Positions 19,788-59,405 of a stretch of DNA of 64,000 nt are shown here, one piece after another. The notes beneath the pieces were generated by a model. The model saw nothing but the letters and a program-made list of their open reading frames with translations. It had not been told where the DNA came from and did no database searches. The translations under genes and the position numbers were made by a program. Numbering within the stretch: the stretch's first letter is position 1; each line of letters starts with the position of its first letter. The stretch covers positions 124,001 to 188,000 of IMG/VR virus record IMGVR_UViG_3300042549_005931, one strand, 5' to 3'.

Positions 19788-22715
19788 TTAGATATTCTCG
19801 AATGATGCTCCTGTTGGAGTAATGATGAATTCTAAGTCAATAAATTCAAGTGCTCTCGTTGGCTTGATATAAATCTTACCTCTTAAAGTATTTGCATCAA
19901 TGTCCTCAGGGTCATTAGATACTGTAACTTTGAATTCATTTAAACCTCTTTCTTTCTTAATTGAATCCAAGATAGGATTAACCAATCTCAAGAACTCATT
20001 TCTTACTTGTTCGTCATTTTGTTCGAATAGTAATCTAACTGCTACTGCTGAAATTAACTTTCTTGCTCTTAACAATAATCTTCTTACGTTGATTCTGTCT
20101 AATGCAGATTCTTTAACTTGTAAAGTTTTGTTACCCCAAATGATTGTACCTGTATCAGCAAATGTTGCGATAGGGTTAATTCTATTTTTGTATAACTCAT
20201 CTCTTTCATCAAGTGTTAATTTTTTAGTTGCTTTGATTGCATTTACTAAACCTCTTGAATAACCTGCCGGTGCAAACCAAGGATACGCTACGTTATCTGT
20301 CAACGCGATGTTCTTTAATACTTCACCTGTTGGTGGGATGTAAAGTTGTGTTGAGTTATCAGTATCTTTTATTTGAACCCAAGGCCAATATGTTGCTGAA
20401 TAATTAGAGTCAATTGACATATTATCTAATTCACTTGCAATATCATCAGCGGTTGTGATATATTCAGGACCCGGAGCGTTTATTACGTATAATGAATCAG
20501 CTCTATCGTTTTCCACCATATCAATCGCATTAGAAACTAATGAACCATGATTTGACCAATCGATACCCGGTGTTGCGAATAAGTTAATATCAACAGCTTC
20601 AGGATTAGAGAATGTTTGAATACCTTGTAAGTAAGCGTAGTAGTCTGAGTTAGGTGAACCATCGGTGGTTACCTTAAACACACCACCATTATCAGTATTA
20701 CCACTTGTGTAAGTCGCTCTACCTAAAACAAATGCATCTGTATTTGTTCTTGTGTTTCTATAGATATCCCAACCATCAAATCCACCAAACAATGCAAATG
20801 TAAATTTACGATAATTGATATTTGTTAATTTATTATCTGTACCTGTTTGACCTTCTAAATCGTATGGTGTTGTTTGGAACTCAAATGATGGTATTGTATT
20901 ACCAGTAGCCTCACCTATTGTTGCTGCGTTAGATGATAAATGGAAACCATAAGTTACCGTATCCCCACTTACTCCTTTGAATTTCAATAAGTCACTATCA
21001 AATCCAACCTGTGTAGACAATCCTAACATTACCTTTTTAACTTTATCTCCACTTGTAGTATTTGGTACACCTGATGTACTGTAACCTGTTACATCACCCG
21101 CATCATAATATTGTGTTTTAAAAAGTACACTACCTAATGTATTACCATTATCATTGGTGAATGAACTAAAACCCTTGAAACCTGCCGGTATTGCATCTGT
21201 TGGATGATTGTCAGCTAAAATAATTGATACATATTTTGAACGTAATTCATAATCACCATCCGAAGTACCAATTTTTCTACCAATATAGCCGGTCGCCTCA
21301 GGATTCATTGAACATCTTGAATATTTCTCTAATACCACCATATTTTCGTCGGTATCACCATAATCACGAATTAATAAATCAAATTCCGCCGTGTCTAAAT
21401 TAATGTTAATTACAGAAATTTTCAATTGGAAGTTAGCGTCTTCACCATCTGAAATAGTTTGTAATTGGAATAAATCGGATACATTTCCACCACGTACCTC
21501 AGATACAACCATTGGTGATACAGTAGTATCCCACTCAGTTGCAAAATTACTTGTCTCAGAAGTATCTGTTAAAGATGAAACATCTAAACCTCTAATATAT
21601 CCTTTTTCAAAAGCGGTTGCCAATAATTTTGGATAAACTTCGTGTACATATAACGGGAAATCAGAAGCCGATTTATCGAATACTTTTCCACCTAATACTT
21701 TCTTAATGTATTTTGAAGATGATGTGTCTAATGAACATACGAATGAAGTTCCACCCGTAACGGTTGCCCCTGTTACGTTAATTACAAACTCACCTAATGG
21801 ATTAGTTGATAAATCAAAACCCGTATTATCAGAAATCGATACTTGAGTTGAACCAGTAACTTCAAGATTTAATTGTTGGGTAACACCATATGAACCACGT
21901 GGTCTTAATGCCGTAACAACAATTCCATCATAATCTGTATTTAAAACCGCATCAAATGAAAATCTTGTTACGTTAAAAATATTAGCACCACTACTCCATT
22001 CAAATAAGTATGAATAAACCGTGTCAGTACCATCGTTATATGTGTTATACCAGTTTTTATTATATGTTGATGATGCATAATTTGCACCCGTCATTGGTGA
22101 TACCACTTCAGTACCTGTCGGAATTTCAGCAGTTGGGATAACCCCAATTGCAAACCATAGACCAGTATTACCTGTTAGACCACTATATGTTTCATAAATG
22201 TAGTCAGTTACGGTACTACCATCAAAAGCCATCTTAGTTGAAAGTTCAGCATAATATGTACTACCTGTAAATCCTGATAATGGATTTGGGTCCATATTTT
22301 CAGTTACACCTGTAATCACATTATCCAACCATTGGTCTTCCAACGTCGCACCTGTTGCAACTACCGGTGAAAATCCACCTAATGTTGTGATACCTAAAGT
22401 AATATTAGGTTTATATCCAGTTAAACCAAGTACTCTTGTTACGAATAATTGATTTGACTCTTGTAAATAAGATTTTGCTACGTAAGGTAACTCATATTTT
22501 GGATTGTTGTTTCCGAATTTCTCAGGAGACGTTCCACCAAAATAAGTTTTGAATTCGTCGAAATTAGAAATTAAAATTGGTTCAAATGCTGGACCTTTTA
22601 ATGTCTCACCAACTAATCCCAATGTTGTTACTCCGACACTTTGCGCTACGAATGTTAAGTCTTTCTCGGATGTATAAACACCGGGAGAAACGAATACTCT
22701 GTTTGAATTTGCCAT
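19788..22715 (-). CDS. tail sheath protein (T4 gp18-like)
   Basis: VSPGVYTSEKDL N-terminus; YSATYWPW, WFAPAG..RG, WGNKTL, RINVRRLL, FEQND C-terminal domain. Confidence 0.96.
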   Translation of the reverse strand: MANSNRVFVSPGVYTSEKDLTFVAQSVGVTTLGLVGETLKGPAFEPILISNFDEFKTYFGGTSPEKFGNNNPKYELPYVAKSYLQESNQLFVTRVLGLTGYKPNITLGITTLGGFSPVVATGATLEDQWLDNVITGVTENMDPNPLSGFTGSTYYAELSTKMAFDGSTVTDYIYETYSGLTGNTGLWFAIGVIPTAEIPTGTEVVSPMTGANYASSTYNKNWYNTYNDGTDTVYSYLFEWSSGANIFNVTRFSFDAVLNTDYDGIVVTALRPRGSYGVTQQLNLEVTGSTQVSISDNTGFDLSTNPLGEFVINVTGATVTGGTSFVCSLDTSSSKYIKKVLGGKVFDKSASDFPLYVHEVYPKLLATAFEKGYIRGLDVSSLTDTSETSNFATEWDTTVSPMVVSEVRGGNVSDLFQLQTISDGEDANFQLKISVININLDTAEFDLLIRDYGDTDENMVVLEKYSRCSMNPEATGYIGRKIGTSDGDYELRSKYVSIILADNHPTDAIPAGFKGFSSFTNDNGNTLGSVLFKTQYYDAGDVTGYSTSGVPNTTSGDKVKKVMLGLSTQVGFDSDLLKFKGVSGDTVTYGFHLSSNAATIGEATGNTIPSFEFQTTPYDLEGQTGTDNKLTNINYRKFTFALFGGFDGWDIYRNTRTNTDAFVLGRATYTSGNTDNGGVFKVTTDGSPNSDYYAYLQGIQTFSNPEAVDINLFATPGIDWSNHGSLVSNAIDMVENDRADSLYVINAPGPEYITTADDIASELDNMSIDSNYSATYWPWVQIKDTDNSTQLYIPPTGEVLKNIALTDNVAYPWFAPAGYSRGLVNAIKATKKLTLDERDELYKNRINPIATFADTGTIIWGNKTLQVKESALDRINVRRLLLRARKLISAVAVRLLFEQNDEQVRNEFLRLVNPILDSIKKERGLNEFKVTVSNDPEDIDANTLRGKIYIKPTRALEFIDLEFIITPTGASFENI

Positions 22716-33211: not shown

Positions 33212-33264
33212 ATTTTAATAAATATCTTTCATTTGGTTTGATATTTATATAAAAAATATATCTA

Positions 33265-34038
33265 ATGAATAATTTTATAAAACAAGTTATTGAGGAGAAA
33301 TTCGCATCAAAGGCACAACAAAGGTTTTTTTATGCTCAGGCAGGTGAAGGTGGAAAAAAAGGTAAGAAGTGGTCAAAATGGGCAAAAGAATTTTCTGATA
33401 AAACAAATTATGATGAAATACCTGATAAAGTAGAGGAAGAGGATATTGATGAGATTATTGACACTAATGGAAACATTGAAACTAGTAAATTACCAACAAA
33501 TTTTAATTCAAAACAAACAACATCAAAAAGAACTTCAGATGACAACCAAAAAACTCGAGCAAATATGATGGGTAATTACGGTACAACAGGTGTTCAAAAT
33601 TATAGAAAGTATTGGATGGAAAATAGAAAAATAACTAAAGGTGAAATACTTGAAGTTATGTTAGGTGATACATTAGGTGCTGATGAGACTATATTAAAGG
33701 ATAAGTCATATAAAGAAGCGTATGTATATTTTACAAAAGAATTAGGATTAACAAGAGAAAAGGCACTTGATAAAATGGCGGACTTAGGTTATAGTGAAGA
33801 TTTACCTAAAGGTCAGGTTATTATGGTTGAAAATCCTAAAAAATACATTGAAGAATATATCGACGAACTTTTAAAGAAAAAAAATAATAATGATGATTTG
33901 GTTTCTAAAGATGAAGAAATAGAAGAAGTTGAAATCAACCCGATAGTAAAAAGACAAATCAATTCATTAAAAAATAGCATGAAGACTTATGGTTTAAAAC
34001 CTGACCACATAATGAAAGGTTTAAAAGACGATGAATAA
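33265..34038 (+). CDS. hypothetical protein, putative internal head protein
   Basis: IKQVIEE tag followed by a basic KFASKAQQRFFYA module; TATTTATA at 33242-33249. Confidence 0.65.
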   Translation: MNNFIKQVIEEKFASKAQQRFFYAQAGEGGKKGKKWSKWAKEFSDKTNYDEIPDKVEEEDIDEIIDTNGNIETSKLPTNFNSKQTTSKRTSDDNQKTRANMMGNYGTTGVQNYRKYWMENRKITKGEILEVMLGDTLGADETILKDKSYKEAYVYFTKELGLTREKALDKMADLGYSEDLPKGQVIMVENPKKYIEEYIDELLKKKNNNDDLVSKDEEIEEVEINPIVKRQINSLKNSMKTYGLKPDHIMKGLKDDE

Positions 34039-34528
34039 AGAATTAAAAGATAGAGTTTTTAATATCCCACAAAATGTTTTAAATCAAATCAATCATACGG
34101 TTGGTGGTTTAATGGGTAAACATGCAGATGGATTAATGAGAGCTAAAAAACTTTTATCAGACAAAACTGTAACTTACGGACAATTAAAAAGAATTATTCA
34201 CGATTTACAAACAATTGATAAGGTTAATAATATTACAAAATATAATTTGGCGGGTGGTGATTTAATGAACACTTGGTCTAAACAATTTTTACAAGGTGAA
34301 AGAAATTTAGTTAGTAATGCTAAAGATTCAAGAAAAAGAGCGGATGATATAGGTAGTATAACTGGAGAAAGAAGAAATAGTCACTTATCTTCACATAAAA
34401 AGAAAGATAATTTTAGAATACCGACAAATCCATTAAAAAGTAATTCAGATAAAACATCGGTTTCATCAATAACATCAACCGGTTTATTCGAAGAAATTGA
34501 AAAAATTAAAAAATTAATTATTTACTAA
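34031..34528 (+). CDS. basic hypothetical protein with C-terminal LFEEIEKIKKLI tag
   Basis: Intact, translationally coupled ORF. Confidence 0.65.
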   Translation: MNKELKDRVFNIPQNVLNQINHTVGGLMGKHADGLMRAKKLLSDKTVTYGQLKRIIHDLQTIDKVNNITKYNLAGGDLMNTWSKQFLQGERNLVSNAKDSRKRADDIGSITGERRNSHLSSHKKKDNFRIPTNPLKSNSDKTSVSSITSTGLFEEIEKIKKLIIY

Positions 34529-34529
34529 T

Positions 34530-35201
34530 ATGGAAAACAAAACACAATTAGAAATATTGGCAGAACAATACAGACAAGAAGTCGTATCAAAAAATTCTTA
34601 TAGTTCAAATCAAATATATGATTCTAACAATCCTAATTCATTATCTAATGGTGATGAAAAAGGTAAAGGAGACTATAACGGACAAATAGGTTCCTCAATT
34701 GATATTCAAAACCGTATTGGCAACTTAGCTAAAAACACTTACAACGAAAATAGTATATACGATAGTAATAATCCAAACGCATTATCTACCGGAGATGATA
34801 AAGGTAAAGGTGATGTGGGTGGACAGGTTGGTTCTTCGGTTGATATTCAAAATAGAATTGCAAACCTATCTAAAAATACATATAATGAAAAGTTTTCATA
34901 TGACTCTAACAATCCAAACGCACTATCAAACGGAGACGATAAAGGTAAGGGTGAATTAGAAACAAAAATTGGTTCATTAACTGACATTAATTCAAGAAAT
35001 GAAGTTATAGCTAAAAACATTTATAATTCTGAAAACCAATACTCGTCAATTAATTTAAATGCATTATCTAATGGTGACGATAAAGGTAAGGGAGATGTTG
35101 AAGGAAGGGTTGGTTCTTTAACTGACATAAATGTAAGAACAGAAGTTGTAGCAAAAAATAAATATAACGGTACAAAAGGATATCCTGACTTTGTAATATG
35201 A
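34530..35201 (+). CDS. protein with four tandem 47-aa repeats
   Basis: Repeat KNxY..YDSNNPNALSNGDDKGKG...GS..DI..R four times plus a partial copy. Confidence 0.8.
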   Translation: MENKTQLEILAEQYRQEVVSKNSYSSNQIYDSNNPNSLSNGDEKGKGDYNGQIGSSIDIQNRIGNLAKNTYNENSIYDSNNPNALSTGDDKGKGDVGGQVGSSVDIQNRIANLSKNTYNEKFSYDSNNPNALSNGDDKGKGELETKIGSLTDINSRNEVIAKNIYNSENQYSSINLNALSNGDDKGKGDVEGRVGSLTDINVRTEVVAKNKYNGTKGYPDFVI

Positions 35202-35896
35202 TTTTAAACAATGTTGTCCTTAAAATAATTGAGGAACAAAATATTAATACAAGTAAAACAAGACCTATTATTAACGCGATTAAAAATAGGAACAAGATTT
35301 CTTTTTATTACAAAGGACCAACAAGACCTAAAAAAACAAGTGTTAAACCCGGTTATCGTATTAAAGCTGAAGTGGTTGCATTAGGATTAAGTAAAAAGGG
35401 TAATCTACTTATTAGAGCATTTGTTAAGCCACCATCTACCTCTAAAAAAGGATTCACCAAGACGGGATGGAGAACTTTTATGGTTAGTAGAATGAGCGGT
35501 TTACAAATTACGGATGATGTATTTAATGAAAAAAGACCGGGATATAACGAGGGTGATGATAGAACATTTAGTGTGACTTATGTTAAAACAGATTGGGGCA
35601 CTAAGAGCGAACCAAAATCTATTGAAAAACCACAGGTGGAACCAACACCACAACCAAAACCACCGGTACAGGAACCAACAACTACAGTAGAACCAGAAAA
35701 AACAGAACTACCACAACCAAAACCAGTTGAAAAACCACAGGCGGAACCAACACCACAAGAAGAAAAACCGGAACCTGAAGAGTTACCTCAACCAAAACCT
35801 GAAGAAAAACCATTAGAAAATCCTGAAGAGGATGAAGATGAGAATCTTATGGAAAATATTAAACGAATAAAAGGTTTAATGTTATTGTTAAATTAA
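35198..35896 (+). CDS. stand-alone WYL-domain protein with Pro/Glu-rich tail
   Basis: AIKNRNKISFYY..G.R.......LG....GN.LIRAF....GWRTFMVSRMSGLQIT matches the WYL fold; no HTH. Confidence 0.75.
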   Translation: MILNNVVLKIIEEQNINTSKTRPIINAIKNRNKISFYYKGPTRPKKTSVKPGYRIKAEVVALGLSKKGNLLIRAFVKPPSTSKKGFTKTGWRTFMVSRMSGLQITDDVFNEKRPGYNEGDDRTFSVTYVKTDWGTKSEPKSIEKPQVEPTPQPKPPVQEPTTTVEPEKTELPQPKPVEKPQAEPTPQEEKPEPEELPQPKPEEKPLENPEEDEDENLMENIKRIKGLMLLLN

Positions 35897-35920: not shown

Positions 35921-36535
35921 ATGTCACAGGGAAACAACGGATTAAAGACTGGTCCAATTTCAGCAAATGATTTAATGAGTAAATTAGCTAAGGCAAGTAA
36001 AGTAATGCAAAAAGTACAGGGAGGAGATTTTTCAAGAGGTAATGTTAACGAGTCTATGTTATCAGGTGGATATGATGATGGTGGTGAATATGCACAACAA
36101 TCATACACTCAACCACAATTACAACAAAACCAATATAGTGCTCCTGATTTTGACGTATCTAAAATTCAAAATTCTAAATTACCTGACGCAATTAAAAAAG
36201 CTATGATGGAAAACCCAATCTCTCAAATCTCTTTAGGTGAAACTCTTGACATGGACTTTGTAAAAGGTGCTAAACGGTTAATTGAACAAGAAAATCGTGC
36301 CAACAACCCATCAAAATCAAACCAACAATCTAAACCAGTACAAAATGTTGGTGGTAATATTGATATGAACGCAATTGCAGTATTAATAGAGAATACTGTT
36401 CGTAAAGTAATGGATGAGAAACTAAATCAAATCTTAACTGCACAAACAACATCAACAATTAATGAAAATCTTGTGTTAAAAGTGGGAGATTCAATTTTCA
36501 AAGGTAAAATTACGGGAGTTAATAAATCTAAATAG
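35921..36535 (+). CDS. hypothetical protein (204 aa)
   Basis: Intact ORF with VNE, LIE and INE sites and an IENTVRKVMDE helix. Confidence 0.7.
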   Translation: MSQGNNGLKTGPISANDLMSKLAKASKVMQKVQGGDFSRGNVNESMLSGGYDDGGEYAQQSYTQPQLQQNQYSAPDFDVSKIQNSKLPDAIKKAMMENPISQISLGETLDMDFVKGAKRLIEQENRANNPSKSNQQSKPVQNVGGNIDMNAIAVLIENTVRKVMDEKLNQILTAQTTSTINENLVLKVGDSIFKGKITGVNKSK

Positions 36536-36583: not shown

Positions 36584-37810
36584 ATGTCAAAAATTAAAAT
36601 ACTCGCTATTCCATCGGATTCACACGGTGTTGGCAAATTCAGAATCTTAGACCCATACAAATATATTGGGGATAATTACATTGGTGATATTCACGTTGAT
36701 ATTTCATTTAATGTACCCAATACAAACGAATCTTTCAATGGATACGATATTGTAGTATTCCATAGTTTTATACATCAAACAACACACGAAGATAATATTG
36801 ATAGAATCAAGTGGTTAAAAAAAGAAGGTATTAAAACTATCATGGATATTGATGATTTTTGGTCACCGGACCAAAGACATCCAATGTATCAACAAATAGT
36901 TACATCAAGAATTGCAGAAAGAAAACTGGATATGTTAAGATTGGTTGATTATATCACAACAACCACACCAATTTTTGCAAAAACAATCCAGAATAAATTA
37001 AACACAAAAAATGTATTAATTTACCCCAATTCAGTTAATGATGAGGAACCACAGTTTAAACCAAACCCAATAAAATCAGATAAAGTAAGATTTGGATGGT
37101 TAGGTGGTTCATCACACTTACATGATATTGAATTAATGTCCGATGGTATCTCAACAACATTAGATAATCTTAAAGATAAGACACAATTTGTGTTATGTGG
37201 GTTCGATTTAAGAGGCTCCGTAACTGAAATTGATAGAAATACCAATGAACAAAGAAAAAGACCTATCAGACCAACAGAAACTGTGTGGTATCGATATGAA
37301 CAGGCGTTTACCAAAAATTATACATCCTTAGATTTGGATTATCGAAATTATCTACTTAATTTTACGGAGTTACCATATAACGATGAGGATAAAATTTATA
37401 GAAGAAGATGGACTCAGGATATTATGAAGTATGCTAACAACTACAATTATTTTGACGTGTCTTTAGCACCATTAGTTGAGTCAACATTCAACGCAAATAA
37501 ATCTCAGTTGAAAGTTATTGAGGCGGGTTTCCATAAAAAAGCAATCATTGCAAGTGAAACTGACCCTTATACATTAGATTTAATATCTGCAGTTGATAAT
37601 GGTAACTTTAATAGTAATGGTAACGCATTATTAGTTAACCCAAAACGTAATCACAAAGATTGGGCTAAACACATGAAACGTTTAGTTGATAATCCTAATA
37701 TGATTGAAGATATGGGTAATCGTTTATATGAAACAGTAAAAGACAAATATTCATTAAGAAAAACCTGTCAAGATAGAGTAGAATTTTTTAAATCAATTAT
37801 TAACAATTAA
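36584..37810 (+). CDS. glycosyltransferase, GT-B fold (GT4-like)
   Basis: DIDDFW, RFGWLGGSSHLHD, DVSLAPL...FN..KSQLKVIEAG. Confidence 0.88.
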   Translation: MSKIKILAIPSDSHGVGKFRILDPYKYIGDNYIGDIHVDISFNVPNTNESFNGYDIVVFHSFIHQTTHEDNIDRIKWLKKEGIKTIMDIDDFWSPDQRHPMYQQIVTSRIAERKLDMLRLVDYITTTTPIFAKTIQNKLNTKNVLIYPNSVNDEEPQFKPNPIKSDKVRFGWLGGSSHLHDIELMSDGISTTLDNLKDKTQFVLCGFDLRGSVTEIDRNTNEQRKRPIRPTETVWYRYEQAFTKNYTSLDLDYRNYLLNFTELPYNDEDKIYRRRWTQDIMKYANNYNYFDVSLAPLVESTFNANKSQLKVIEAGFHKKAIIASETDPYTLDLISAVDNGNFNSNGNALLVNPKRNHKDWAKHMKRLVDNPNMIEDMGNRLYETVKDKYSLRKTCQDRVEFFKSIINN

Positions 37811-38060: not shown

Positions 38061-38096
38061 AACACCAGTCGTTAATTCGGCTGGTGTTAATTTTTT
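38061..38096 (+). terminator. rho-independent terminator
   Basis: AACACCAGTCG-N6-CGGCTGGTGTT followed by a T tract. Confidence 0.75.
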
Positions 38097-38104
38097 ATTA
38101 AGAA

Positions 38105-48409: not shown

Positions 48410-48922
48410 ATGAAAAATTTAAATCAAATCATTAAAACTCAACTTAGAAAAGTTATTGAGGAACAAGAAACTGAGAACTATATGTTTTTTGGTAATTTAG
48501 AACAAATCAAAAGACAATGTGAATTGTTATTAAGTTTTGATAAACAAATGATTGAAAATTTATTACAAAATGGACACGATTGGGCTGATGACCATGTATC
48601 GGAGGCTAAGAATAATATGGACCAAGTTTTTGATTTTATTATGAATGAAAAAGAAAAAGGTCAAACAGTTAATGAGGCATCATCAGCAGCACAACAAGCA
48701 GCAATTGCTATCAACATGAAGAAGAAAGGTATTAAACCTAAAAACGAATCTGTTGAAATGGAAATTGATGAGAGTAAAAATTGTCCGACAGACCCAGCAA
48801 AATGGGCTGCATCAAAAGCCGCAGCGAAAAGAAAATTTGACGTATATCCTTCAGCATATGCAAATGGATGGGCTGCAAAAAATTATAAAGCTAAAGGTGG
48901 TGGTTGGAAAAAATGTAAATAA
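48410..48922 (+). CDS. modular protein, putative internal head polyprotein
   Basis: IIKTQLRKVIEE tag; basic modules after VNE and IDE sites. Confidence 0.65.
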   Translation: MKNLNQIIKTQLRKVIEEQETENYMFFGNLEQIKRQCELLLSFDKQMIENLLQNGHDWADDHVSEAKNNMDQVFDFIMNEKEKGQTVNEASSAAQQAAIAINMKKKGIKPKNESVEMEIDESKNCPTDPAKWAASKAAAKRKFDVYPSAYANGWAAKNYKAKGGGWKKCK

Positions 48923-50516: not shown

Positions 50517-52241
50517 TTAACGTAAAGTATCGATAGAGAATGTTTGTAAACCACTTACATTAATTACACCAAAGTAACGGTTGTTAACCATTTTCTTCGC
50601 ATAACGAGTCATGATACCTTTGATAGGTGTGAAGTTAAATGGATTGTACATTGTTGGAGTTAATTGTAATGGTACGTATGGTGCGTAGATGTAACCTGCA
50701 TCCAATAATGACTTACCTTTGTGTCCAATCAAGATTTTTCCTGCTGGGAAGTAAGGGTCACGGAATACTTGGTAACGACCTGCTAATGTACCAACTTTTT
50801 CAATACCCATGTTGTATGAGTCTTGCTCAGGACCTGCGTTTGAAACGTGGAAGTACTCTAAATCGTCAAATACTGCAGAAACTTCTGAAGAAATAACAAT
50901 CCAGTTAGCACCACCTCTCAAAGTAGTCTTGTGGATTTGTGCTGAAATTTGGTTAACTTTAGTAATTAAAGTTTGGTTCCAGTCTTTTTGAGTGTAACCT
51001 TGTAAAGTTGCACCACCGTTTCCACCATATTTCCACTCATTGTAATCCCACTTAGCTGTCCAAGCCGCACCTTTACGTAAATCACGTAAGATTTCACGGT
51101 CAACCTCAGCAGCGATTTGCTCAGATAACAATGCAGTTAATTCTGCTTCAGCATCAATGTTGTGGAACGCTGAAACGTCTTGAGCTAACTCAGGAGACCA
51201 AGAAGCTCTTAATTTTCTTTCAGTTACAGAAACTGTTACAGAATCTAAATCGAAAGAAACCTCACCGATAGCATCTTCAAATTCTAAAGAAGCGTATTGA
51301 CGATAAGTTGCAACAAAGTCAGAACCAACTAAAGTTGAACCTGCAACTGTGTGGTTACTGAAACCTGCTGTAGATGAATAAGTTTGTAAATCAACGTTTA
51401 AGTAGATTACACCATTAGCATCACAAATGTCATTATATTGACCAGTAATACCTGCAGATTTTGTTCCGTATTCTACAATACCTTTACCGTATTTTTGAGT
51501 TACCACAGTAAATGGTAAAGCCGCACCCGATTGAACTTGTGCCGCTGAGATAGCCAAAGAAGCTAAGAATTCTTCAGTATCCATTTCGTTTCCGTTAGGA
51601 CCCGCTAATTTACCTGCACCACCACTAGTGAAACCTGATAACTTAACGATAACAGAACTTAAAGAAGTACCTGTAGTTCCTGTGTAAGCACTTTCAACAC
51701 CTGAAGCGAAAGTAACGATTGATGTTCCAGTTAAAGAAATTGTTGAATAATCACCTTTTGAGTAATCAAACAATCCTGAATCAGCAGCATCTGAAGTTTC
51801 ATAGAAACGGTCATAAAGATTAGTTCCTGTGTAACCAGTTGTTGCAGATGTTCCACCAGCACCACCAGGGATACCGTATGGAGAATAGTGTGCTCCTGCA
51901 TTTCTTTCCTGAATTTTAGGAATGAAATAGAATAATTTACCGATAGGTAAGTTCATAGCCTGAACTGAAACGATATCGTTCGCTAATAATTTAGAGAATA
52001 CACGACGGATGATAGGGAATACCACTGTCTCGAATGAACCTGAAGCGTCAGATACTGCTGCTTCGTTGATTAAGTAAGACGCTTGGTTTTCATATAATTG
52101 CGCGATGTTATCTCTTTGGTGACCGTTAAGACCTTCTAAAAAGCCTAAATCATCCCATTTTTTGATGGTATCTTCTTTGATAACACGAAGGTGCTTAAGA
52201 CCGATGTTACCAACCATACCTGATTCTAATAATGCTCCCAT
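50517..52241 (-). CDS. major capsid protein (T4 gp23-like)
   Basis: VSVQAMNLP.G, RKLRASWSPELAQD..AFH.IDAEAEL, YAPYVPL, P.KGIMTRY. Confidence 0.97.
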   Translation of the reverse strand: MGALLESGMVGNIGLKHLRVIKEDTIKKWDDLGFLEGLNGHQRDNIAQLYENQASYLINEAAVSDASGSFETVVFPIIRRVFSKLLANDIVSVQAMNLPIGKLFYFIPKIQERNAGAHYSPYGIPGGAGGTSATTGYTGTNLYDRFYETSDAADSGLFDYSKGDYSTISLTGTSIVTFASGVESAYTGTTGTSLSSVIVKLSGFTSGGAGKLAGPNGNEMDTEEFLASLAISAAQVQSGAALPFTVVTQKYGKGIVEYGTKSAGITGQYNDICDANGVIYLNVDLQTYSSTAGFSNHTVAGSTLVGSDFVATYRQYASLEFEDAIGEVSFDLDSVTVSVTERKLRASWSPELAQDVSAFHNIDAEAELTALLSEQIAAEVDREILRDLRKGAAWTAKWDYNEWKYGGNGGATLQGYTQKDWNQTLITKVNQISAQIHKTTLRGGANWIVISSEVSAVFDDLEYFHVSNAGPEQDSYNMGIEKVGTLAGRYQVFRDPYFPAGKILIGHKGKSLLDAGYIYAPYVPLQLTPTMYNPFNFTPIKGIMTRYAKKMVNNRYFGVINVSGLQTFSIDTLR

Positions 52242-52277: not shown

Positions 52278-53456
52278 TTATTTTATTTTTGACATCAAAT
52301 CCTTCATTCTTTTGAATTGTGGATTTTCGTACGCCTTTGATTCCGCTAACATTTCTTTAGAAGATGATGTTGTTGGAGTGTTAGAAATTTTATTAGCCAC
52401 TGTTTCTGTTATAGGGTTTTTAGTTTCTAACTCATTTTTTATTGTATTGAAAAGTGCTTTTGATTCGTTCATATTATTGATACCATCAAATCTCTTCAAT
52501 ATGTTTAATTTTTCTTGTTTTGTAGTTGAATGTTCTGTGAACAAACGAGTTGAATATGCTAAGTTTGCGTTGAAAACTGCAACCTCGTTAAGTTTTTCCT
52601 TGAATAAAACTAAGGCTTTCTTATATTCACCATTTTGTTTTTTCAATTTTTCAACTTCTTCGTTAATTGCTCCTGAACCTGCTTTGTATTTTGTTTTACT
52701 ATCTAAACCAGCTCTGTCTTGACCACCTTTGTTGCCATGTACATTTGATTTAGTTCTTGCAGCTTCTTCCATTTCTTCTTCTTTAGAATCATCATCTTCT
52801 TCATCTAATTCGATTTCGTAGATAACCTCATCCTCAGTCATTTCAACGTCATAAGACATATCATCACCTTCTAACATATCATCATCATCATATGACATAT
52901 CATCTTCTTCGGCAATCTCTTCACCATCTTCGTCATCGAGTTTAATGATATAATCATTATCTCCATCACTGAAGTGAACAGAGTCACCATCTTTCTTTAC
53001 GATAATACCATCTTCAGGTTTCATAGCTTTGAATACTTTCATTACTTCTTCATCAGAAGCTCCTGTCATATCCATTGCATCATCTTCATCTTCAAAAGGA
53101 TTCTCATCTTCTTCACTTTCTGAAGAATACTCATCGTCTTCTCCTTCTTCTGAATCTAAATCTTCACCTTCCTCAGAATCTAATCCTGCTGGCATTTCGT
53201 TATCAAGGTTTTCTTCTCCTTCAGCATCTTCAGCACCTTCTTCATCGGCACCTTCGTCTGACATGTCATCTGTTTCCTCTTCTTCAGGATTTGGTTGCTC
53301 AGCAACGTCTTCCTCTTTTTCCATACTTTCTTTAAGCAAGTCATTTAGTTCTTGTTTCATTGTTGAAGCAAGTATACCCTTTGCATTTTGCTTTACTGCT
53401 TCTTCAAGTGTTTGTACTTGAAGTAACGCTTGTTCTAAAATTGATTTTTCAGTCAT
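52278..53456 (-). CDS. prohead core / scaffolding protein (gp22-like)
   Basis: Highly acidic with coiled coils; lies between protease and MCP. Confidence 0.8.
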   Translation of the reverse strand: MTEKSILEQALLQVQTLEEAVKQNAKGILASTMKQELNDLLKESMEKEEDVAEQPNPEEEETDDMSDEGADEEGAEDAEGEENLDNEMPAGLDSEEGEDLDSEEGEDDEYSSESEEDENPFEDEDDAMDMTGASDEEVMKVFKAMKPEDGIIVKKDGDSVHFSDGDNDYIIKLDDEDGEEIAEEDDMSYDDDDMLEGDDMSYDVEMTEDEVIYEIELDEEDDDSKEEEMEEAARTKSNVHGNKGGQDRAGLDSKTKYKAGSGAINEEVEKLKKQNGEYKKALVLFKEKLNEVAVFNANLAYSTRLFTEHSTTKQEKLNILKRFDGINNMNESKALFNTIKNELETKNPITETVANKISNTPTTSSSKEMLAESKAYENPQFKRMKDLMSKIK

Positions 53457-53537: not shown

Positions 53538-54221
53538 TTATTTAGATAAAAATTTGTCTAAACCACCCATTAATTTTTTCATTCTGTCATTAAGTTCAGG
53601 TTTCTCTTGTATAGACTCTTGATATTGGTCTCTATCTGCTGGGTCATTAAATACATATGCCCCCGGTGTAGATGGAGACGACACTAAGTCAAAACATACT
53701 AATTCAAAATCATCTTGAACAATATTTTGACCTCTTTCACTTTTTAATGAACCAACACCACGTGATGATATACCTAAAGTTGCACCATTCATGATTAACA
53801 TTGCCGCTTGGTCACCTTTAGTAGAAACAATACCCATCTTCTTCCAACCTGGAGAAGTGAATAACTTTATTTTACCCATTAATATTTTTCCATCCCAATA
53901 TGTTTCAAGAATTGAATGGGATACTCTATCTAAGTCGATAAGAGATGATGATGGGTGATTTAACTCATTAAGAGCACCACCTTTTTTAATAAGTGTTTGA
54001 TATTTTTCTACTTCTCTTTTAAGAAGCATTTCAGGATAGATTCTCCCGTTCTTATTTGGTGTATCGTATTTCTGTAAAACAGCATAAAGGATAAGGTCTT
54101 CTGAAAAGTCCATATCCCTCATCTCTGATATAATTTTTTTATTGTCGTCAGGGGACACATGACCCGCGTCATATTCAATAAGAATACCTTTCCCTGTTTC
54201 GTTCGGACCTAAAATCTTCAT
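53538..54221 (-). CDS. prohead protease (T4 gp21-like)
   Basis: NKNGRIYP, ELNHP, VSH, GISSRGVGS, DLVSSPSTPGA. Confidence 0.95.
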   Translation of the reverse strand: MKILGPNETGKGILIEYDAGHVSPDDNKKIISEMRDMDFSEDLILYAVLQKYDTPNKNGRIYPEMLLKREVEKYQTLIKKGGALNELNHPSSSLIDLDRVSHSILETYWDGKILMGKIKLFTSPGWKKMGIVSTKGDQAAMLIMNGATLGISSRGVGSLKSERGQNIVQDDFELVCFDLVSSPSTPGAYVFNDPADRDQYQESIQEKPELNDRMKKLMGGLDKFLSK

Positions 54222-54787: not shown

Positions 54788-54976
54788 ATGTTAATTGTTG
54801 ATTTAAGTAAAGAAAAAAGTATTGAGAGTGCTTTGAGAACTTTTAAGGGTAAAGTTTTAAAAACTAAGCTTGTTCAAAAATTAAGAGAAAGACAAGAGTT
54901 CACAAAACCCTCAGTTACTAAGAGAAAACAGAAATTGAAAGCTGTTTATCTACAGAAAAAAAATGGTCTTGATTAA
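54788..54976 (+). CDS. rpsU: ribosomal protein bS21 (phage-encoded)
   Basis: IESALRTFK.KV.KT......RERQEFTKPSVTKR...KAVY, Bacteroidota-type bS21. Confidence 0.93.
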   Translation: MLIVDLSKEKSIESALRTFKGKVLKTKLVQKLRERQEFTKPSVTKRKQKLKAVYLQKKNGLD

Positions 54977-55712: not shown

Positions 55713-57527
55713 TTAGTCGTTTAATATGTCTGTTATTTTAGTTTCTATTTCATAAATATTCTGTTGTGCTTTATTCATATCAAATAAGATATTAAAATCT
55801 TCTTTTTCCTCACCTAACATACCTAATATTTTTGATTTTCTTGAAGTAGATTCACTTAATGGTTCCGCAGCAGGTGCTTCGGCAGGTGCTCCACCACCCA
55901 TATCCATTCCACCACCGGCAGCAGCTTCACCACCACCTGCGGCAGCTTCAGCCTTTTCTCTTTCTTCCTCAGGGATACCATACTTAGCATCCACATTGTC
56001 GAAGATACCTGAACGTTTAATGATTAACTGACTCGTATTCATTAATTCGAAACCAACCGCTCTTTCAAGACGTTGTTGTTGTAAATCAAGTAATACTTCA
56101 GCATCACTCATACCAAGAATATTTTTCTTAGCCCATGTATGAGACACCGGTAAAATACCCATTTGAGATTGGTCAGATGTTGCATCCTTATAAAGAGTAA
56201 CCTTTTCTTTCCATTGTTCAATACGTAATAAATCAGATTGTGCTGATGGATTAGTTAAACCTAACGTAAAGTTATTTAATTCATCCTCTAAACCTAATAG
56301 ATACAAGTGAACTAATGCTATTTTATTTAACTCTTGAATAACTGATTTTTGAATTCTGTTAATTGTACGAGCAAAACGAATATCCATTAATGCTAAACTC
56401 TTACCTTCACCAACAACCTCTTCAAAACCTAAGAAAGCTTTTGGTATACGTAAAGCTGCAAGTAGTTTCTTTTGAATATATTCAATATCGGCAATTTCAC
56501 CTAAGTTTGTTGCTCCGGGTAATGTATCGATTGGACTTGGAGCTGCAGGGTCACGTACAGGGATAAAATAATCTTGGTCTACTGACATTTGATTATATCT
56601 CATATCTACCTGACCATTACGTGGGTCGGATATTTGGTCTCTTTTGAATTTACTTGCCACACGTTGTACATAAGCTTCAATATCTTTATCATCCATGTTA
56701 CCCACAAATATTTTAAAGATACGTCTTTCAGGTGCTCTTGATGTTCTATAAATTAACATCGCATCTTCAGCAAGAAGTAATTGTTTCCAAATACGTCTAA
56801 TCTTATCTAACATAGAAGTACCATAAGGTAATTTTCTATCGTCACCTAAAATTCTAAAGTGTGCAACTTCCCAAGCTTGGAATTCCATATCTTTATTCTT
56901 CCAATGGAATCTCAATTCACGTGACGGCATTTTAACATCTCTAGCTTGTCCCGCAGTTTTACTTGATGCGCCTTCCAATCTTTCAATTTCAATGTTTGGT
57001 AATTGTTGACACCCAATGATACCCTTTTCAGGGTCAATTTTTAAGTATACAAAGTTATCCCCATACTTACATAGACCTCTTGTCCACATTTGTAAGTTGG
57101 TGTTAACATCTAATACGTTTTTGAATAAGTCATCAAGGATATTCTTTACTCTTGTTGATTCAGAAAATATTGTTAATATTTCACCCTTCTCAGACATTGT
57201 GGTTGATTCTTCAGCATAGATATCTAAAGCTGCGGAAATCTCCGGAGTAAATTCCATAGATTCATAATCATAATATGCAGCCAATCTATTTGGTTCGTAA
57301 TAAACCGATTGGTTATATAATGATTGGTCAAGTTTAGCCCATTTATCAGCAATGTACTGACTTTGTTGAGCTTGTAATAACGCCTTTTCGTATTCTTCTC
57401 TACTATCGGTCTTTAATAATTCGTCTTTTGAGAAACTAAATGATGGTACTTGGTCGGGTCTTGTTTTCCCCGGATATCCAAACATCTTGGTCAATTTCTG
57501 AAAAACTGTAAAATTCTGTTCTGCCAT
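55713..57527 (-). CDS. portal protein (T4 gp20-like)
   Basis: PEISAALDIYAEE, EDAMLIYRTSRAPERRIFKI.VGN, DYFIPVR, IDTLPG, ALRIPK. Confidence 0.96.
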   Translation of the reverse strand: MAEQNFTVFQKLTKMFGYPGKTRPDQVPSFSFSKDELLKTDSREEYEKALLQAQQSQYIADKWAKLDQSLYNQSVYYEPNRLAAYYDYESMEFTPEISAALDIYAEESTTMSEKGEILTIFSESTRVKNILDDLFKNVLDVNTNLQMWTRGLCKYGDNFVYLKIDPEKGIIGCQQLPNIEIERLEGASSKTAGQARDVKMPSRELRFHWKNKDMEFQAWEVAHFRILGDDRKLPYGTSMLDKIRRIWKQLLLAEDAMLIYRTSRAPERRIFKIFVGNMDDKDIEAYVQRVASKFKRDQISDPRNGQVDMRYNQMSVDQDYFIPVRDPAAPSPIDTLPGATNLGEIADIEYIQKKLLAALRIPKAFLGFEEVVGEGKSLALMDIRFARTINRIQKSVIQELNKIALVHLYLLGLEDELNNFTLGLTNPSAQSDLLRIEQWKEKVTLYKDATSDQSQMGILPVSHTWAKKNILGMSDAEVLLDLQQQRLERAVGFELMNTSQLIIKRSGIFDNVDAKYGIPEEEREKAEAAAGGGEAAAGGGMDMGGGAPAEAPAAEPLSESTSRKSKILGMLGEEKEDFNILFDMNKAQQNIYEIETKITDILND

Positions 57528-57580: not shown

Positions 57581-59365
57581 TTATTTTTTTCTTCCATTAA
57601 ACAACCATGAGTATTCCATATATGCTTCTCTACCAACTTGTTGATTAGTATTACCCCCATACATTGAATTGCTACTATCCATACCCATAGAACCTATTTG
57701 GTCAAATGACCCACCATATGAATAAAAAGATTTTTGTGGCTCATACGTTCTTTCAGACATTGTCCATGATTCAATCATTGCTCTATTAACTGATTCGGTT
57801 TTTTGTAATTGATTGAAACATAAATCACCAGCATATAATGCCATTGACATACTCATAATAGCATCATCGTGAGAACCTTTCATGTGGTCAGGTCTTCCGT
57901 TCATATAAACAAACGTATTAAGTTCATTTAATAGTCTACTTGACCTAACTTGAAAACCTTTTCTTAATTGTTCTTCAAATGCCGCAACAATCTGCGTTCT
58001 TTTATTGTTAAAGTTAAGACCGGGTATTTTTTCCATGGCCTTAGCGTTATATTCCCAAATGTTTTGAGTATTAACACCATCAATATAAATATTTTTATAA
58101 TTTAACTCTTGTAATTTTCTTGATGTTGCAACACCCATACCACCGGTGATATCAATAACGATAAAAGCGTTACCATATATCACACCCCACTTATACGCAA
58201 TTTGTGCCAAATCGTCCGGTGGTATCTTACCAATATATTCAAGTACTTGTTCTCTATCATCAAAATCGACAATACTAATTGCTGAAAAGTCTTCACTATC
58301 ACCTCTACTAACATCGACACCCATAATATAACGGTGACCTTCAATTGGTTCTTTCCACTGCCATAATGTAGCTTGCATGTATTTCTCAATAGGAACACGA
58401 ATCATGTTCTTAGAAATATTCTCTTGAACAAAACCCGGTATAACACCATCACCCGAACCCAAGAAGTCACACTCTAATTCTTGTGAAATTTTACGTCTAT
58501 CGTATTTGAACTTTTTAGACATAGACTCAAACCAAGATGAATATGGTTTATAACCCTGTTCTTCCAATTCTTTATAATTGGACATATCAAACTCATAAAT
58601 AACAACTTCGTTATCATCATATTGTTCTCTGTTTAACATGTAATGACATATATCCTGACATTTAACCCATCGTAAGTCTTTGGTATAACGAGGGTCTTTA
58701 AACCACCTTAAATCTGTTATGTGGAAATCATTAATTCCACGAATAGCTTGGTCGTATACACCATAATAAATTGGGTCGTAACCATTTGGAGTTGAGATTA
58801 GAATAATCTTACCACCCGTAGATAGGGAGGCCATAGATGCAGCCCAAAAATCTTCTCCTGCTTCAATATATGCAGCCTCGTCAAATACAAGTACGGTAGG
58901 TGTAAAACCACGAAGTGCATCCGCAGATGTTGCAACAGCTTTAACTTCGGAACCGTTATTTAATCTAAATCTACTCTCAGAGTTTTTATCGGGTGAAAAT
59001 CCAACATTAATCCATTCGGGCCATTGGTCTAAGAAGTTTCTAATCTTATTAGCCATTTCCACGGCGGTATCTTTCTTATTGGCAATAATCAAAACTCTTT
59101 CAGGATTTTCTGGTTTGGCAAATTGTAATTTCTTTGATAACCAAGCGGCTGTTACGGTTGTTACACCGGCCTGACGATATTTCTTTGTGATGTTTTCGTT
59201 ATAATCTTCGTAATCTTGAATTAATTGTAATTGGTCAGGAAATAGGTTCATTGGAACGAATTTCTTTTGCGTGTTATCGTATGTTTGTAGATACGTTCTT
59301 AACGCATATGGTGTATCTTTAATGATACGGGCATATTCTTTTAGTTGTTCTAATTTACTATTCAT
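57581..59365 (-). CDS. terL: terminase large subunit (T4 gp17-like)
   Basis: KYRQAGVTT, DEAA, ISTPNG, QELEC.F, GVDVSRG, HDDAIM; start reassigned to MNSKL (59365). Confidence 0.96.
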   Translation of the reverse strand: MNSKLEQLKEYARIIKDTPYALRTYLQTYDNTQKKFVPMNLFPDQLQLIQDYEDYNENITKKYRQAGVTTVTAAWLSKKLQFAKPENPERVLIIANKKDTAVEMANKIRNFLDQWPEWINVGFSPDKNSESRFRLNNGSEVKAVATSADALRGFTPTVLVFDEAAYIEAGEDFWAASMASLSTGGKIILISTPNGYDPIYYGVYDQAIRGINDFHITDLRWFKDPRYTKDLRWVKCQDICHYMLNREQYDDNEVVIYEFDMSNYKELEEQGYKPYSSWFESMSKKFKYDRRKISQELECDFLGSGDGVIPGFVQENISKNMIRVPIEKYMQATLWQWKEPIEGHRYIMGVDVSRGDSEDFSAISIVDFDDREQVLEYIGKIPPDDLAQIAYKWGVIYGNAFIVIDITGGMGVATSRKLQELNYKNIYIDGVNTQNIWEYNAKAMEKIPGLNFNNKRTQIVAAFEEQLRKGFQVRSSRLLNELNTFVYMNGRPDHMKGSHDDAIMSMSMALYAGDLCFNQLQKTESVNRAMIESWTMSERTYEPQKSFYSYGGSFDQIGSMGMDSSNSMYGGNTNQQVGREAYMEYSWLFNGRKK

Positions 59366-59369
59366 ATAG

Positions 59370-59377
59370 TATAAATA
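59370..59377 (-). promoter_or_regulatory. putative late promoter TATTTATA (one representative of about 20 copies)
   Basis: 4 nt before the TerL ATG and directly after a terminator; see findings for the other copies. Confidence 0.7.
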
Positions 59378-59378
59378 C

Positions 59379-59405
59379 AAAAAAAGGAGGTTAAACGCCT
59401 CCTTT
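59379..59405 (-). terminator. rho-independent terminator
   Basis: AAAGGAGG-N7-CCTCCTTT with a T tract on the minus strand. Confidence 0.8.

What the first reader, a model, noticed from the sequence alone, without database searches (positions are those of the whole stretch)
35198..35896. HTH-less WYL domain carrying putative capsid tags at both ends
Seen: a WYL domain (about 35260-35545) with no DNA-binding HTH, a long PEPK-rich linker, an N-terminal LKIIEE and a C-terminal LMENIKRIKGLM, in a late operon. Known: WYL domains sense nucleic acids and regulate defence and DNA-damage responses (BrxR, CapW, DriD, PafBC). Inference: a packaged and injected decoy that sequesters ssDNA/RNA signals or poisons host WYL regulators.
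Basis: partly seen in the sequence, partly recalled or inferred. Interest (0 to 1): 0.62.

Follow-up and report, generated by a model that had tools for sequence, protein, structure and literature searches.

The report
Phage WYL protein with capsid tags
A large T4-like phage makes, late in infection, a small DNA/RNA-sensor-type (WYL) protein without any gene-regulator part, whose two ends look like removable address labels for the inside of the virus head, so it is probably carried in the head and perhaps injected with the DNA; this has not been shown.

Summary
The ORF (35198-35896, +, 232 aa) is real and conserved. Residues ~20-131 fold as a WYL domain: the AF2 model has pLDDT 89, and the nine best PDB matches are all DriD, BrxR, CapW or PafBC (Z 7.9-9.6). 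The Pfam hit is below threshold, but profile-linked relatives pass it. There is no HTH. A Pro/Glu/Lys linker and both conserved ends are as described.

New evidence partly supports the "capsid tag" reading:
- The C-terminal tail motif also ends the phage's own gp21-type prohead protease and its scaffold protein. In a distant orthologous phage, the WYL tail matches that phage's protease tail.
- Every tail has a hydrophobic-x-Glu site, the T4 gp21 cleavage type, on the side facing the protein body.
- 79% of family representatives have such a site at residues 4-22, as in the T4 capsid targeting sequence.
- The operon follows the phage's late promoter (TATTTATA).
- One relative is fused to a head-maturation protease domain.

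Best reading: a prohead-targeted, protease-trimmed internal head protein, analogous to T4 internal proteins (confidence ~0.5). Presence in virions, injection, ligand binding and the "decoy" role are untested. It is a new variant of known kinds.

The parts
33242..33249 (+). Late-promoter motif TATTTATA, 23 nt upstream of the first gene of the operon
   Evidence: The 8-mer occurs in 31 of 121 upstream regions against 1.1 expected. It lies upstream of the sheath, portal, terminase, prohead protease and scaffold genes. Sequence read.
33265..34038 (+). First operon gene (257 aa). Its N-terminus holds a VIEE-K leader-like motif that is conserved in orthologues.
34031..34528 (+). Second operon gene (165 aa). 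Its C-terminus carries the same tail motif, preceded by L-F-E.
   Evidence: With the protein under study, one of the only two real ORFs (of five regex matches in the genome; the other three are 50-52-aa ORFs of unrelated sequence) that match the strict tail pattern. The tail is conserved in orthologues L001, L003, L088 and L090.
34530..35201 (+). Third operon gene (223 aa), a repeat protein with an N-terminal L-A-E site
   Evidence: Tandem repeat of 141 bp x 2.4 copies at 34614-34954.
35198..35896 (+). The ORF under study (232 aa, P0001): leader + WYL domain + Pro-rich linker + tail
35198..35236 (+). N-terminal leader (aa 1-13), predicted helix ending in I-I-E-E. Candidate propeptide or capsid-targeting sequence with an (I)xE cleavage site.
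   Evidence: Conserved in the family. 79% of 141 family representatives have [LIV]xE at residues 4-22, against 14% of background windows, and the Glu peaks at residues 12-14. Helix 2-16 in the model.
35255..35590 (+). WYL-fold domain (aa ~20-131), basic (pI 10.5), with a conserved C-terminal RPGY...GDD extension strand
35603..35833 (+). Disordered Pro/Glu/Lys/Thr linker (aa 136-212). It contains two conserved ELPQPKP motifs, at 35705-35725 and 35780-35800.
35846..35893 (+). C-terminal tail (aa 217-232): an L-M-E site followed by an amphipathic helix, core IKRIKGLM. Candidate prohead-docking tag.
35921..36535 (+). Fifth operon gene (204 aa), conserved neighbour of unknown function
36584..37810 (+). 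Glycosyltransferase (408 aa), downstream and possibly on the same transcript
   Evidence: PHROG 7162, E 4e-39. No terminator-like site before 38061.
38061..38098 (+). The only terminator-like hairpin plus T-run downstream of the operon
53538..54221 (-). gp21-type prohead protease (Peptidase_S77). Its C-terminal tail (53541-53606) carries the same motif (RMKKLMG), preceded by I-Q-E.
52278..53456 (-). Acidic scaffold-like protein. Its C-terminal tail (52281-52331) carries the same motif (KRMKDLM), preceded by L-A-E. Its N-terminus has an I-L-E site.
50517..52241 (-). Gp23-type major capsid protein. Its propeptide of about 60 residues ends in I-N-E|A-A.

Best explanation
The gene encodes a late protein of a 269-kb T4-like phage. 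It is built from four pieces: a short N-terminal leader helix, a basic WYL-fold (Sm-like barrel) domain without any DNA-binding HTH, a roughly 77-residue proline-rich spacer, and a C-terminal amphipathic tail.

Proposed mechanism:
1. The tail, which is the same motif that ends the phage's own prohead protease and scaffold protein, and/or the leader dock the protein into the assembling prohead core.
2. The gp21-type protease then cuts at the hydrophobic-x-Glu sites next to each tag. This releases the WYL domain plus spacer inside the head, where it stays with the DNA and is probably ejected into the next host. This parallels the T4 internal proteins and Alt.
3. Once inside the host, the WYL domain most likely binds single-stranded nucleic acid or a nucleotide-type ligand.

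Shown here: the ORF and its conservation, the WYL fold, the absence of an HTH, the sharing of the motifs, their orientation relative to the cleavage-type sites, the presence of the protease, and the late-promoter motif. Inferred: docking, cleavage, residence in the virion, ejection and ligand.
For: - Fold and family.
- Late promoter TATTTATA 23 nt upstream of the overlapping operon, the same motif that precedes the sheath, portal, terminase, protease and scaffold genes.
- T4-type head machinery: Peptidase_S77 and Gp23. The capsid protein's propeptide ends in I-N-E|A, like L-T-E|A in T4-type gp23.
- The tail motif is shared with the protease and the scaffold. It is conserved in IMG/VR relatives.
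- A matrix built without this protein ranks its tail second among 79,453 non-seed windows.
- The motif occurs 15 times in the proteome against 4.8 in shuffles, and 8 of the 15 are at protein termini.
- In a distant orthologous phage (about 37% identity in the WYL domain) the WYL tail matches that phage's protease tail at 5 identical and 5 similar positions out of 12.
- 40 of 45 full-length cluster representatives keep the tail, and all 40 have hydrophobic-x-Glu within 9 residues upstream.
- The two proteins that carry the motif at their N-terminus have L-N-E|Q just after it.
- Leader statistics.
- One relative (P0260) is fused to a head-maturation protease domain.
- Unrelated cargo domains (ParB_N, EF-hand) carry the same kinds of terminal motif.
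- Literature: the T4 capsid targeting sequence directs diverse internal proteins to the scaffolding core and is removed by gp21 (PMC3012670, PMC9958956, PMC7411985). The C-terminal propeptide of the SPN3US protease has been proposed to target it into the prohead (PMC7411985).
Against: - There are no virion proteomics, no isolate and no homologue in any cultured phage.
- The leader is not picked up by the matrix of the other N-terminal tag family, where it ranks 190th.
- Amphipathic helices of this composition also occur by chance. The next matrix hit is the end of a 1042-aa protein that is probably a tail-fibre protein.
- The prediction of the tail in complex with the capsid protein gave no answer.
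- The WYL body is not significantly depleted of cleavage-type sites: 56 observed against 72 expected.
- Late timing rests on a motif alone.
- A glycosyltransferase, and further downstream dUTPase and PhoH genes, follow on the same strand, so the neighbourhood is not purely structural.
Confidence: 0.5

Rival explanations
1. A cytoplasmic late protein that is never packaged. The WYL domain binds ssDNA or RNA, or senses a nucleotide, in the infected cell. The C-terminal peptide tethers it to another phage or host machine, for example in replication, recombination or late transcription, as the C-terminal clamp-binding peptides of T4 proteins do.
For: Characterised WYL proteins act in the cytoplasm as sensors of ssDNA or RNA (structures matched). 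An acidic stretch followed by a hydrophobic C-terminus is also typical of clamp-binding peptides (my own knowledge). Nucleotide-metabolism genes lie downstream on the same strand.
Against: The tail motif is shared with the prohead protease and the scaffold protein, not with the polymerase, the sigma-like factor or any replication protein. The sites flanking both tags match the specificity of the head protease. The promoter is the late type, as for structural genes.
Confidence: 0.2
2. An assembly-only core component. It enters the prohead with the scaffold but is then expelled or degraded during maturation, like T4 gp67, gp68 and gp22, and is not delivered to the host.
For: It carries the same tags as the scaffold and protease. 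It has a long disordered acidic linker like scaffold proteins. It is strictly syntenic and universally present in the clade, which suits a structural role.
Against: The folded basic domain has no (L/I)xE site, and only one weak site (V-Q-E followed by Pro) lies between the two tags. After trimming, a stable product of about 200 residues is therefore expected. A conserved ligand-binding fold is hard to explain for a pure scaffold.
Confidence: 0.15
3. An external head or neck decoration. The tail anchors the protein to the capsid, and the proline-rich stalk displays the small barrel domain on the outside as an adhesin.
For: A TonB-like proline-rich spacer (weak Pfam TonB_N hits in two homologues). 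A glycosyltransferase gene lies in the same operon.
Against: The anchoring motif is shared with the protease and the scaffold, both of which are internal proteins. The domain is strongly basic and of the WYL type, whose known ligands are nucleic acids.
Confidence: 0.07
4. The terminal motifs are generic amphipathic helices with no common function, and the protein is simply a stand-alone phage WYL protein of unknown role.
For: The motifs are short. The pattern was defined after seeing the data. One high-scoring window is probably unrelated.
Against: The tail is conserved in 40 of 45 divergent cluster representatives, always with the adjacent hydrophobic-x-Glu. The tail matches the protease tail of the same genome in two divergent phages. 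The motif is enriched at protein termini, P about 2e-4.
Confidence: 0.08

Closest known systems
[quoted passage not shown]
   Same: A T4-type head with a gp21-family protease. A short N-terminal leader ending in hydrophobic-x-Glu. Late expression. Small, charged, non-essential-looking cargo encoded in a cluster. The same tags attached to diverse cargo domains.
   Different: No sequence similarity to the T4 internal proteins. The cargo is a WYL fold. There is an additional C-terminal tag, shared with the protease and the scaffold, which has not been described for T4 internal proteins. Packaging is not demonstrated.
WYL-domain regulators BrxR, CapW, DriD and PafBC
   Same: The same barrel fold with its N-terminal helix (Z 7.9-9.6). 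The family's sequence hallmarks are present: F-x-Y, a conserved Arg in strand 2, and R-x-F-x-x-x-R-hydrophobic.
   Different: No winged HTH and no WCX dimerisation domain. The protein is encoded by a phage in a late operon. The domain is attached to a proline-rich spacer and terminal tags. The ligand is unknown.
C-terminal docking tails of maturation proteases and scaffolds (SPN3US gp245 propeptide; HK97 protease tail; herpesvirus protease and scaffold tail cut at the M site)
   Same: The protease and the scaffold share a C-terminal tail that is preceded by a protease site. In those systems the tail binds the capsid or core and is then cut off.
   Different: Here a third and a fourth, non-assembly protein carry the tail. 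Binding was not demonstrated.
Stand-alone phage WYL proteins (database clusters of 90-160 aa, uncharacterised)
   Same: Homologous domain (profile E 1e-6 to 1e-12). Many have the same kind of leader. All are viral.
   Different: They lack the linker and the tail. None has a known function.

Membership tests
WYL domain (Pfam PF13280) | The Pfam model scores above its gathering threshold | tested here: not met
   18.4 bits against 21.8. The hit is sub-threshold but present in 23 of 23 homologues.
WYL domain (Pfam PF13280) | Sequence link through intermediates to proteins that do pass the Pfam threshold | tested here: met
   A profile of the domain finds P0233, P0258, P0252, P0194 and P0247. These score 41.6, 41.9, 26.7, 24.2 and 22.0 bits for WYL.
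WYL domain (Pfam PF13280) | Sm-like five-stranded barrel with a preceding helix, closest to solved WYL domains | tested here: met
   Model pLDDT 89.3. The top nine PDB representatives are all WYL proteins, Z 7.9-9.6, clear of Hfq/Sm at or below 6.7. Foldseek probability is 1.0 but E is only 0.015-0.05.
WYL domain (Pfam PF13280) | Binds ssDNA, RNA or a nucleotide ligand | not testable with these tools
   The only indirect hint is a basic domain, pI 10.5.
WYL transcription regulators (BrxR, CapW, DriD, PafBC) | N-terminal winged HTH DNA-binding domain | tested here: not met
   Only 14-16 residues precede the domain, and no HTH family matches.
WYL transcription regulators (BrxR, CapW, DriD, PafBC) | C-terminal WCX dimerisation domain | tested here: not met
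   After the barrel there is only a short conserved extension with one strand (aa 126-130), followed by a disordered linker.
T4-type internal (ejection) head proteins | The phage has a gp21-family prohead protease and a Gp23-type capsid with a cleavable propeptide | tested here: met
   Peptidase_S77 at 76.6 bits and Gp23 at 247 bits. The propeptide ends in I-N-E|A-A, against L-T-E|A in T4-type gp23.
T4-type internal (ejection) head proteins | Short N-terminal propeptide ending in (L/I)-x-Glu | tested here: met
   I-I-E at aa 10-12 and I-E-E at aa 11-13. The feature is conserved: 79% of family representatives against 14% of background windows. This is met at the sequence level only.
T4-type internal (ejection) head proteins | Late expression together with the head genes | tested here: inconclusive
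   The late-promoter motif lies upstream of the operon.
T4-type internal (ejection) head proteins | Present in virions in processed form and ejected into the host | not testable with these tools
   No isolate and no proteome. No homologue in cultured phages.
Protease/scaffold-type C-terminal docking tail | The same tail motif as the phage's own protease and scaffold, preceded by a protease-type site | tested here: met
Protease/scaffold-type C-terminal docking tail | The tail binds the capsid protein or the core | tested here: inconclusive
   The complex prediction with the capsid protein gave no answer.

The most novel reading that the evidence does not exclude
A very abundant, uncultured clade of T4-like jumbo phages, probably infecting Bacteroidota, may use two interchangeable terminal tags that its protease removes. 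One of them copies the docking tail of its own protease and scaffold. With these tags the phage would load a set of unrelated cargo proteins into the head: the WYL domain, a ParB-like protein, an EF-hand protein, a metalloprotease-like protein and others. The injected HTH-less WYL domain would then act as a sponge for the ssDNA or nucleotide signal that de-represses WYL-controlled defences such as BREX or CBASS. That would be a pre-loaded anti-defence protein of a new type.
Probability: 0.12. Interest if true: 0.85.

Novelty: new variant of a known kind. Interest (0 to 1): 0.62.

Why it matters
How proteins are selected for the prohead core is still called mysterious even for T4 (PMC9958956). 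Here one phage group offers a readable code: a tail shared by protease, scaffold and cargo, plus leaders, each next to a cleavage-type site. That code predicts which proteins are packaged, and it can be tested with reporter fusions.

If the WYL domain is indeed delivered with the DNA, it would be the first case of a phage carrying the sensor module of host defence regulators as cargo. It would also give a direct handle on the signal those regulators read. The tags could serve for loading foreign proteins into capsids, as the T4 capsid targeting sequence already does.

Tried and rejected
- Complex prediction of the capsid protein (574 aa, shallow alignment A4) with the tail (aa 192-232): verdict 'no answer', score 0.00. 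This is not evidence either way.
- PHROGs for the protein: no family.
- tblastn of the protein, and of two distant relatives, against 50,697 phage records: nothing, or only an uncultured 636-kb phage. No virion proteome can therefore be borrowed.
- Profile against PDB sequences: none with A2, and BrxR at E 1.9 with A3.
- T4 late promoter TATAAATA: not the promoter of this phage.
- Idea that the leader belongs to the 'ILTE-S/E-Q' N-terminal tag family of about ten other late genes: rejected, because the matrix ranks it 190th.
- Depletion of cleavage-type sites in the WYL body across the family: 56 against 72 expected, not significant.
- The same tail in the protease or scaffold of T4, a Vibrio T4-like phage and Microcystis phage Mel-JY01: not found. 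T4 gp21 ends in a merely similar AMKKAL. The motif is specific to this clade.
- The genome search on the record behind L001: record not held.
- The search for related loci with P0178: one partial locus.
- Mapping of the ssDNA-contact residues of DriD or CapW onto the model was left out, because no residue-level structural alignment was available.

Full report
**Setting**

The window is part of a single 269,133-bp contig of 32% G+C. It carries T4-type genes:
- tail sheath, B-family DNA polymerase, baseplate hub;
- Gp23-type major capsid protein, portal, large terminase;
- a gp21-type prohead protease, Peptidase_S77.

The capsid protein is at most 44% identical to that of any deposited phage. 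Metagenomes, however, hold thousands of close relatives, on contigs of up to 335 kb. This is an abundant, uncultured clade of T4-like jumbo phages.

**The observation**

ORF 35198-35896 (+) encodes 232 residues. Its ATG overlaps the stop codon of the preceding gene.

The word search found 428 homologues of 225-288 aa. In an alignment of 23 of them (59-92% identity), three parts are conserved:
- the first roughly 135 residues;
- two ELPQPKP motifs inside an otherwise variable Pro/Glu/Lys/Thr linker;
- the last roughly 16 residues.

The neighbourhood is syntenic in every contig examined, including one whose WYL domain is only about 37% identical. The gene order, by protein length in aa, is 250 / 163 / 220 / this gene / 190 / glycosyltransferase / 78 / about 70 / dUTPase / PhoH.

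**Is it a WYL domain?**

- Pfam scores WYL below threshold, 18.4 against 21.8 bits. The same weak hit appears in all 23 homologues.
- A profile of the domain, searched against 1.84 billion cluster representatives, found 251 clusters. Distant ones are stand-alone proteins of 97-140 aa. Several pass the Pfam WYL threshold on their own, at up to 41.9 bits.
- With 87 diverse sequences, AlphaFold2 gave a confident model: pLDDT 89.3, pTM 0.81, a helix at 22-30 followed by the barrel strands.
- Against 48,161 PDB representatives, the nine best matches are all WYL proteins. They are DriD 7tzv (Z 9.6), BrxR 7qfz (Z 9.5, rmsd 2.6 over 85 residues), DriD 8tp8, BrxR 7t8k, CapW 9c5g, PafBC 6sj9, CapW 7tb6, PafBC 9fnd and DriD 9cu3. 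WYL1 follows at 6.7 and Hfq/Sm proteins at or below 6.7.
- Foldseek agrees in ranking, though its E-values are weak.

I accept the WYL fold. Nothing resembling an HTH or a WCX domain is present. The domain is strongly basic (pI 10.5) and the linker is acidic and proline-rich.

**Late operon**

The T4 late motif is not used here. The most enriched 8-mer in upstream regions is TATTTATA, in 31 of 121 regions against 1.1 expected. It lies 11-46 nt upstream of the sheath, portal, terminase, protease, scaffold and many other genes, and 23 nt upstream of 33265. Gene 33265 is the first gene of the overlapping series 33265 / 34031 / 34530 / 35198, followed after a 24-nt gap by 35921. The only terminator-like site lies at 38061-38098. 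Late timing is thus inferred from a motif, not measured.

**The C-terminal tail**

The tail core (IKRIKGLM, family consensus I-K-x-I-K-x-L-M) has close counterparts at the extreme C-termini of three other proteins:
- the prohead protease (RMKKLMG);
- the acidic scaffold-like protein (KRMKDLM);
- the product of gene 34031, two genes upstream in the same operon.

The same tails are conserved in IMG/VR relatives.

Statistics on the motif:
- A loose pattern occurs 15 times in the proteome against 4.8 ± 2.2 in shuffles. Eight of the 15 are at protein termini, against 12.5% expected (P about 2e-4, defined post hoc).
- A position matrix built from six instances without this protein ranks its tail 8th of 79,459 windows. 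The only better non-seed window is an internal copy in the scaffold itself.
- The next hit is the end of a 1042-aa protein, probably a tail-fibre protein. It is a reminder that such helices can arise independently.

Evidence from other phages:
- In the distant orthologous phage (locus L094), the WYL tail and that phage's protease tail agree at 5 identical and 5 similar positions out of 12, including a shared G-x-L-D extension.
- Of 45 full-length cluster representatives, 40 keep the tail. In all 40, a hydrophobic-x-Glu lies within 9 residues upstream.
- In the two proteins of this genome that carry the motif at the N-terminus, an L-N-E|Q site lies just downstream of it.

A site on the body side of the tag, whichever end the tag is at, is what a detachable address label would need. 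T4 gp21 cuts after Glu in (L/I)-x-Glu. The capsid propeptide here ends in I-N-E|A-A, where T4-type gp23 has L-T-E|A.

**The N-terminal leader**

Residues 1-13 form a helix ending in I-I-E-E-Q, and E13 and Q14 are invariant. Across 141 family representatives, 79% have [LIV]-x-Glu in residues 4-22, against 14% of other windows in the same proteins. The Glu peaks at positions 12-14. Distant stand-alone relatives typically read hydrophobic-I-L/T-E-A.

This matches the T4 capsid targeting sequence in length, position and chemistry. That sequence is about 10 residues long, is removed by gp21, and directs otherwise unrelated internal proteins to the scaffolding core (PMC3012670, PMC9958956, PMC7411985).

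In this genome the pattern [VIL][IL]EE[QK] occurs five times, four of them within the first 25 residues of a protein. The leader is not, however, a member of the separate N-terminal motif family described under other observations below (rank 190).

**Further support**

- One relative (P0260, 659 aa) fuses an XkdF-type head-maturation protease domain to this WYL domain.
- The proteins that share the terminal motifs carry unrelated domains: ParB_N, an EF-hand pair, and a weak M48-like HExxH. This is expected of a targeting signal, not of a paralogous family.
- For phage SPN3US, the C-terminal propeptide of the protease has been proposed to target it into the prohead (PMC7411985).
- From my own knowledge, the HK97 protease tail and the shared C-terminal tail of the herpesvirus protease and scaffold, cut at the M site, work the same way.

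**What is not shown**

- There is no proteome, no isolate and no homologue in a cultured phage.
- The complex prediction with the capsid protein gave no answer.
- Nothing here tests ligand binding, ejection or any effect on host defence.
- Recent work shows that WYL repressors sense a cue produced by restricted infection (PMC13622015). This makes a sponge or decoy role conceivable, but it is speculation.

**Verdict**

The structural half of the interpretation (an HTH-less WYL domain bearing targeting-type tags in a late operon) is supported by new comparative evidence. The functional half (an injected decoy) is open.

My probabilities:
- about 0.5 for a packaged, protease-trimmed internal head protein;
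- 0.2 for a cytoplasmic late WYL protein;
- 0.15 for an assembly-only core component;
- the remainder for an external decoration or meaningless motifs.

This is a new variant of two known kinds: T4-type targeted head cargo, and WYL domain proteins.

**Other observations**

- About ten late genes at genome positions 240-251 kb share an N-terminal I-L-T-E-S/E-Q motif.
- A Bacteroidota-type -7 box, TAnnTTTG, is enriched upstream of other genes.
- A ribosomal protein bS21 gene sits inside the head module.

Noticed in passing
G000:C1:240050-250938 (locus L095), also 218257-219399; outside the window: About ten late genes on the minus strand begin with a shared motif, M-(K)-x-I-L-T-E-S/E-Q-hydrophobic-K-R-I. 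It contains a T4-type L-T-E site at residues 5-9. The bodies are unrelated (ParB_N, a weak M48-like HExxH, unknowns). Internal copies occur in two other proteins. This may be a second capsid-targeting or propeptide class.
   Followed up: partly
G000:C1:247467-248102 and 250951-251472; 74689-75936 (locus L096): Two proteins carry the protease/scaffold-type tail motif at their N-terminus, followed by L-N-E|Q. A 415-aa EF-hand protein carries it at its C-terminus. The tag therefore appears to work at either end of a protein.
   Followed up: partly
whole genome; e.g. window 33242-33249, and upstream of 19788-22715(-), 55713-57527(-), 57581-59380(-): The late promoter of this phage appears to be TATTTATA, not the T4 motif TATAAATA. 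It is often only 11-25 nt from the start codon, which implies very short leaders. A Bacteroidota-type -7 box, TAnnTTTG, is enriched upstream of other genes and hints at the host phylum.
   Followed up: partly
window 54788-54976 (+): A ribosomal protein bS21 gene (Pfam 45.2 bits) sits inside the head module, on the opposite strand to its neighbours. It is conserved in the distant relative L094.
   Followed up: yes
window 34530-35201 (+): The upstream neighbour is a repeat protein: a 141-bp unit in 2.4 DNA copies, and about four copies at protein level of a Y-D-S-N-N-P-N-A-L-S-x-G-D-D-K-G-K-G unit. It has an N-terminal L-A-E site. Function unknown.
   Followed up: no
window 50517-52241 (-), aa 1-60: The propeptide of the capsid protein is almost invariant, even between phages whose WYL proteins are only about 37% identical. 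It ends in I-N-E|A-A. This would fit a hub that binds the shared tails.
   Followed up: partly
window 35705-35725 and 35780-35800: Two copies of ELPQPKP are conserved inside the otherwise variable linker. No explanation. They could form a polyproline-II ligand or a rigid spacer.
   Followed up: no
L092:8001-9980 (protein P0260): A 659-aa protein from another phage type fuses an XkdF-type head-maturation protease domain, this WYL-type domain and a further conserved C-terminal domain. It lies next to very large (990 and 1551 aa) proteins and a lysin.
   Followed up: partly
window 33265-34038 and 48410-48922: Two further late proteins start with a K-x-V-I-E-E-(K/Q) leader like that of the protein under study. 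The second ends in a weak DUF5872-like segment.
   Followed up: no
G000:C1:203000-214000: The ORF scan gives many short, odd reading frames here, of the kind usually seen over tRNA gene arrays. Not checked with a tRNA finder.
   Followed up: no
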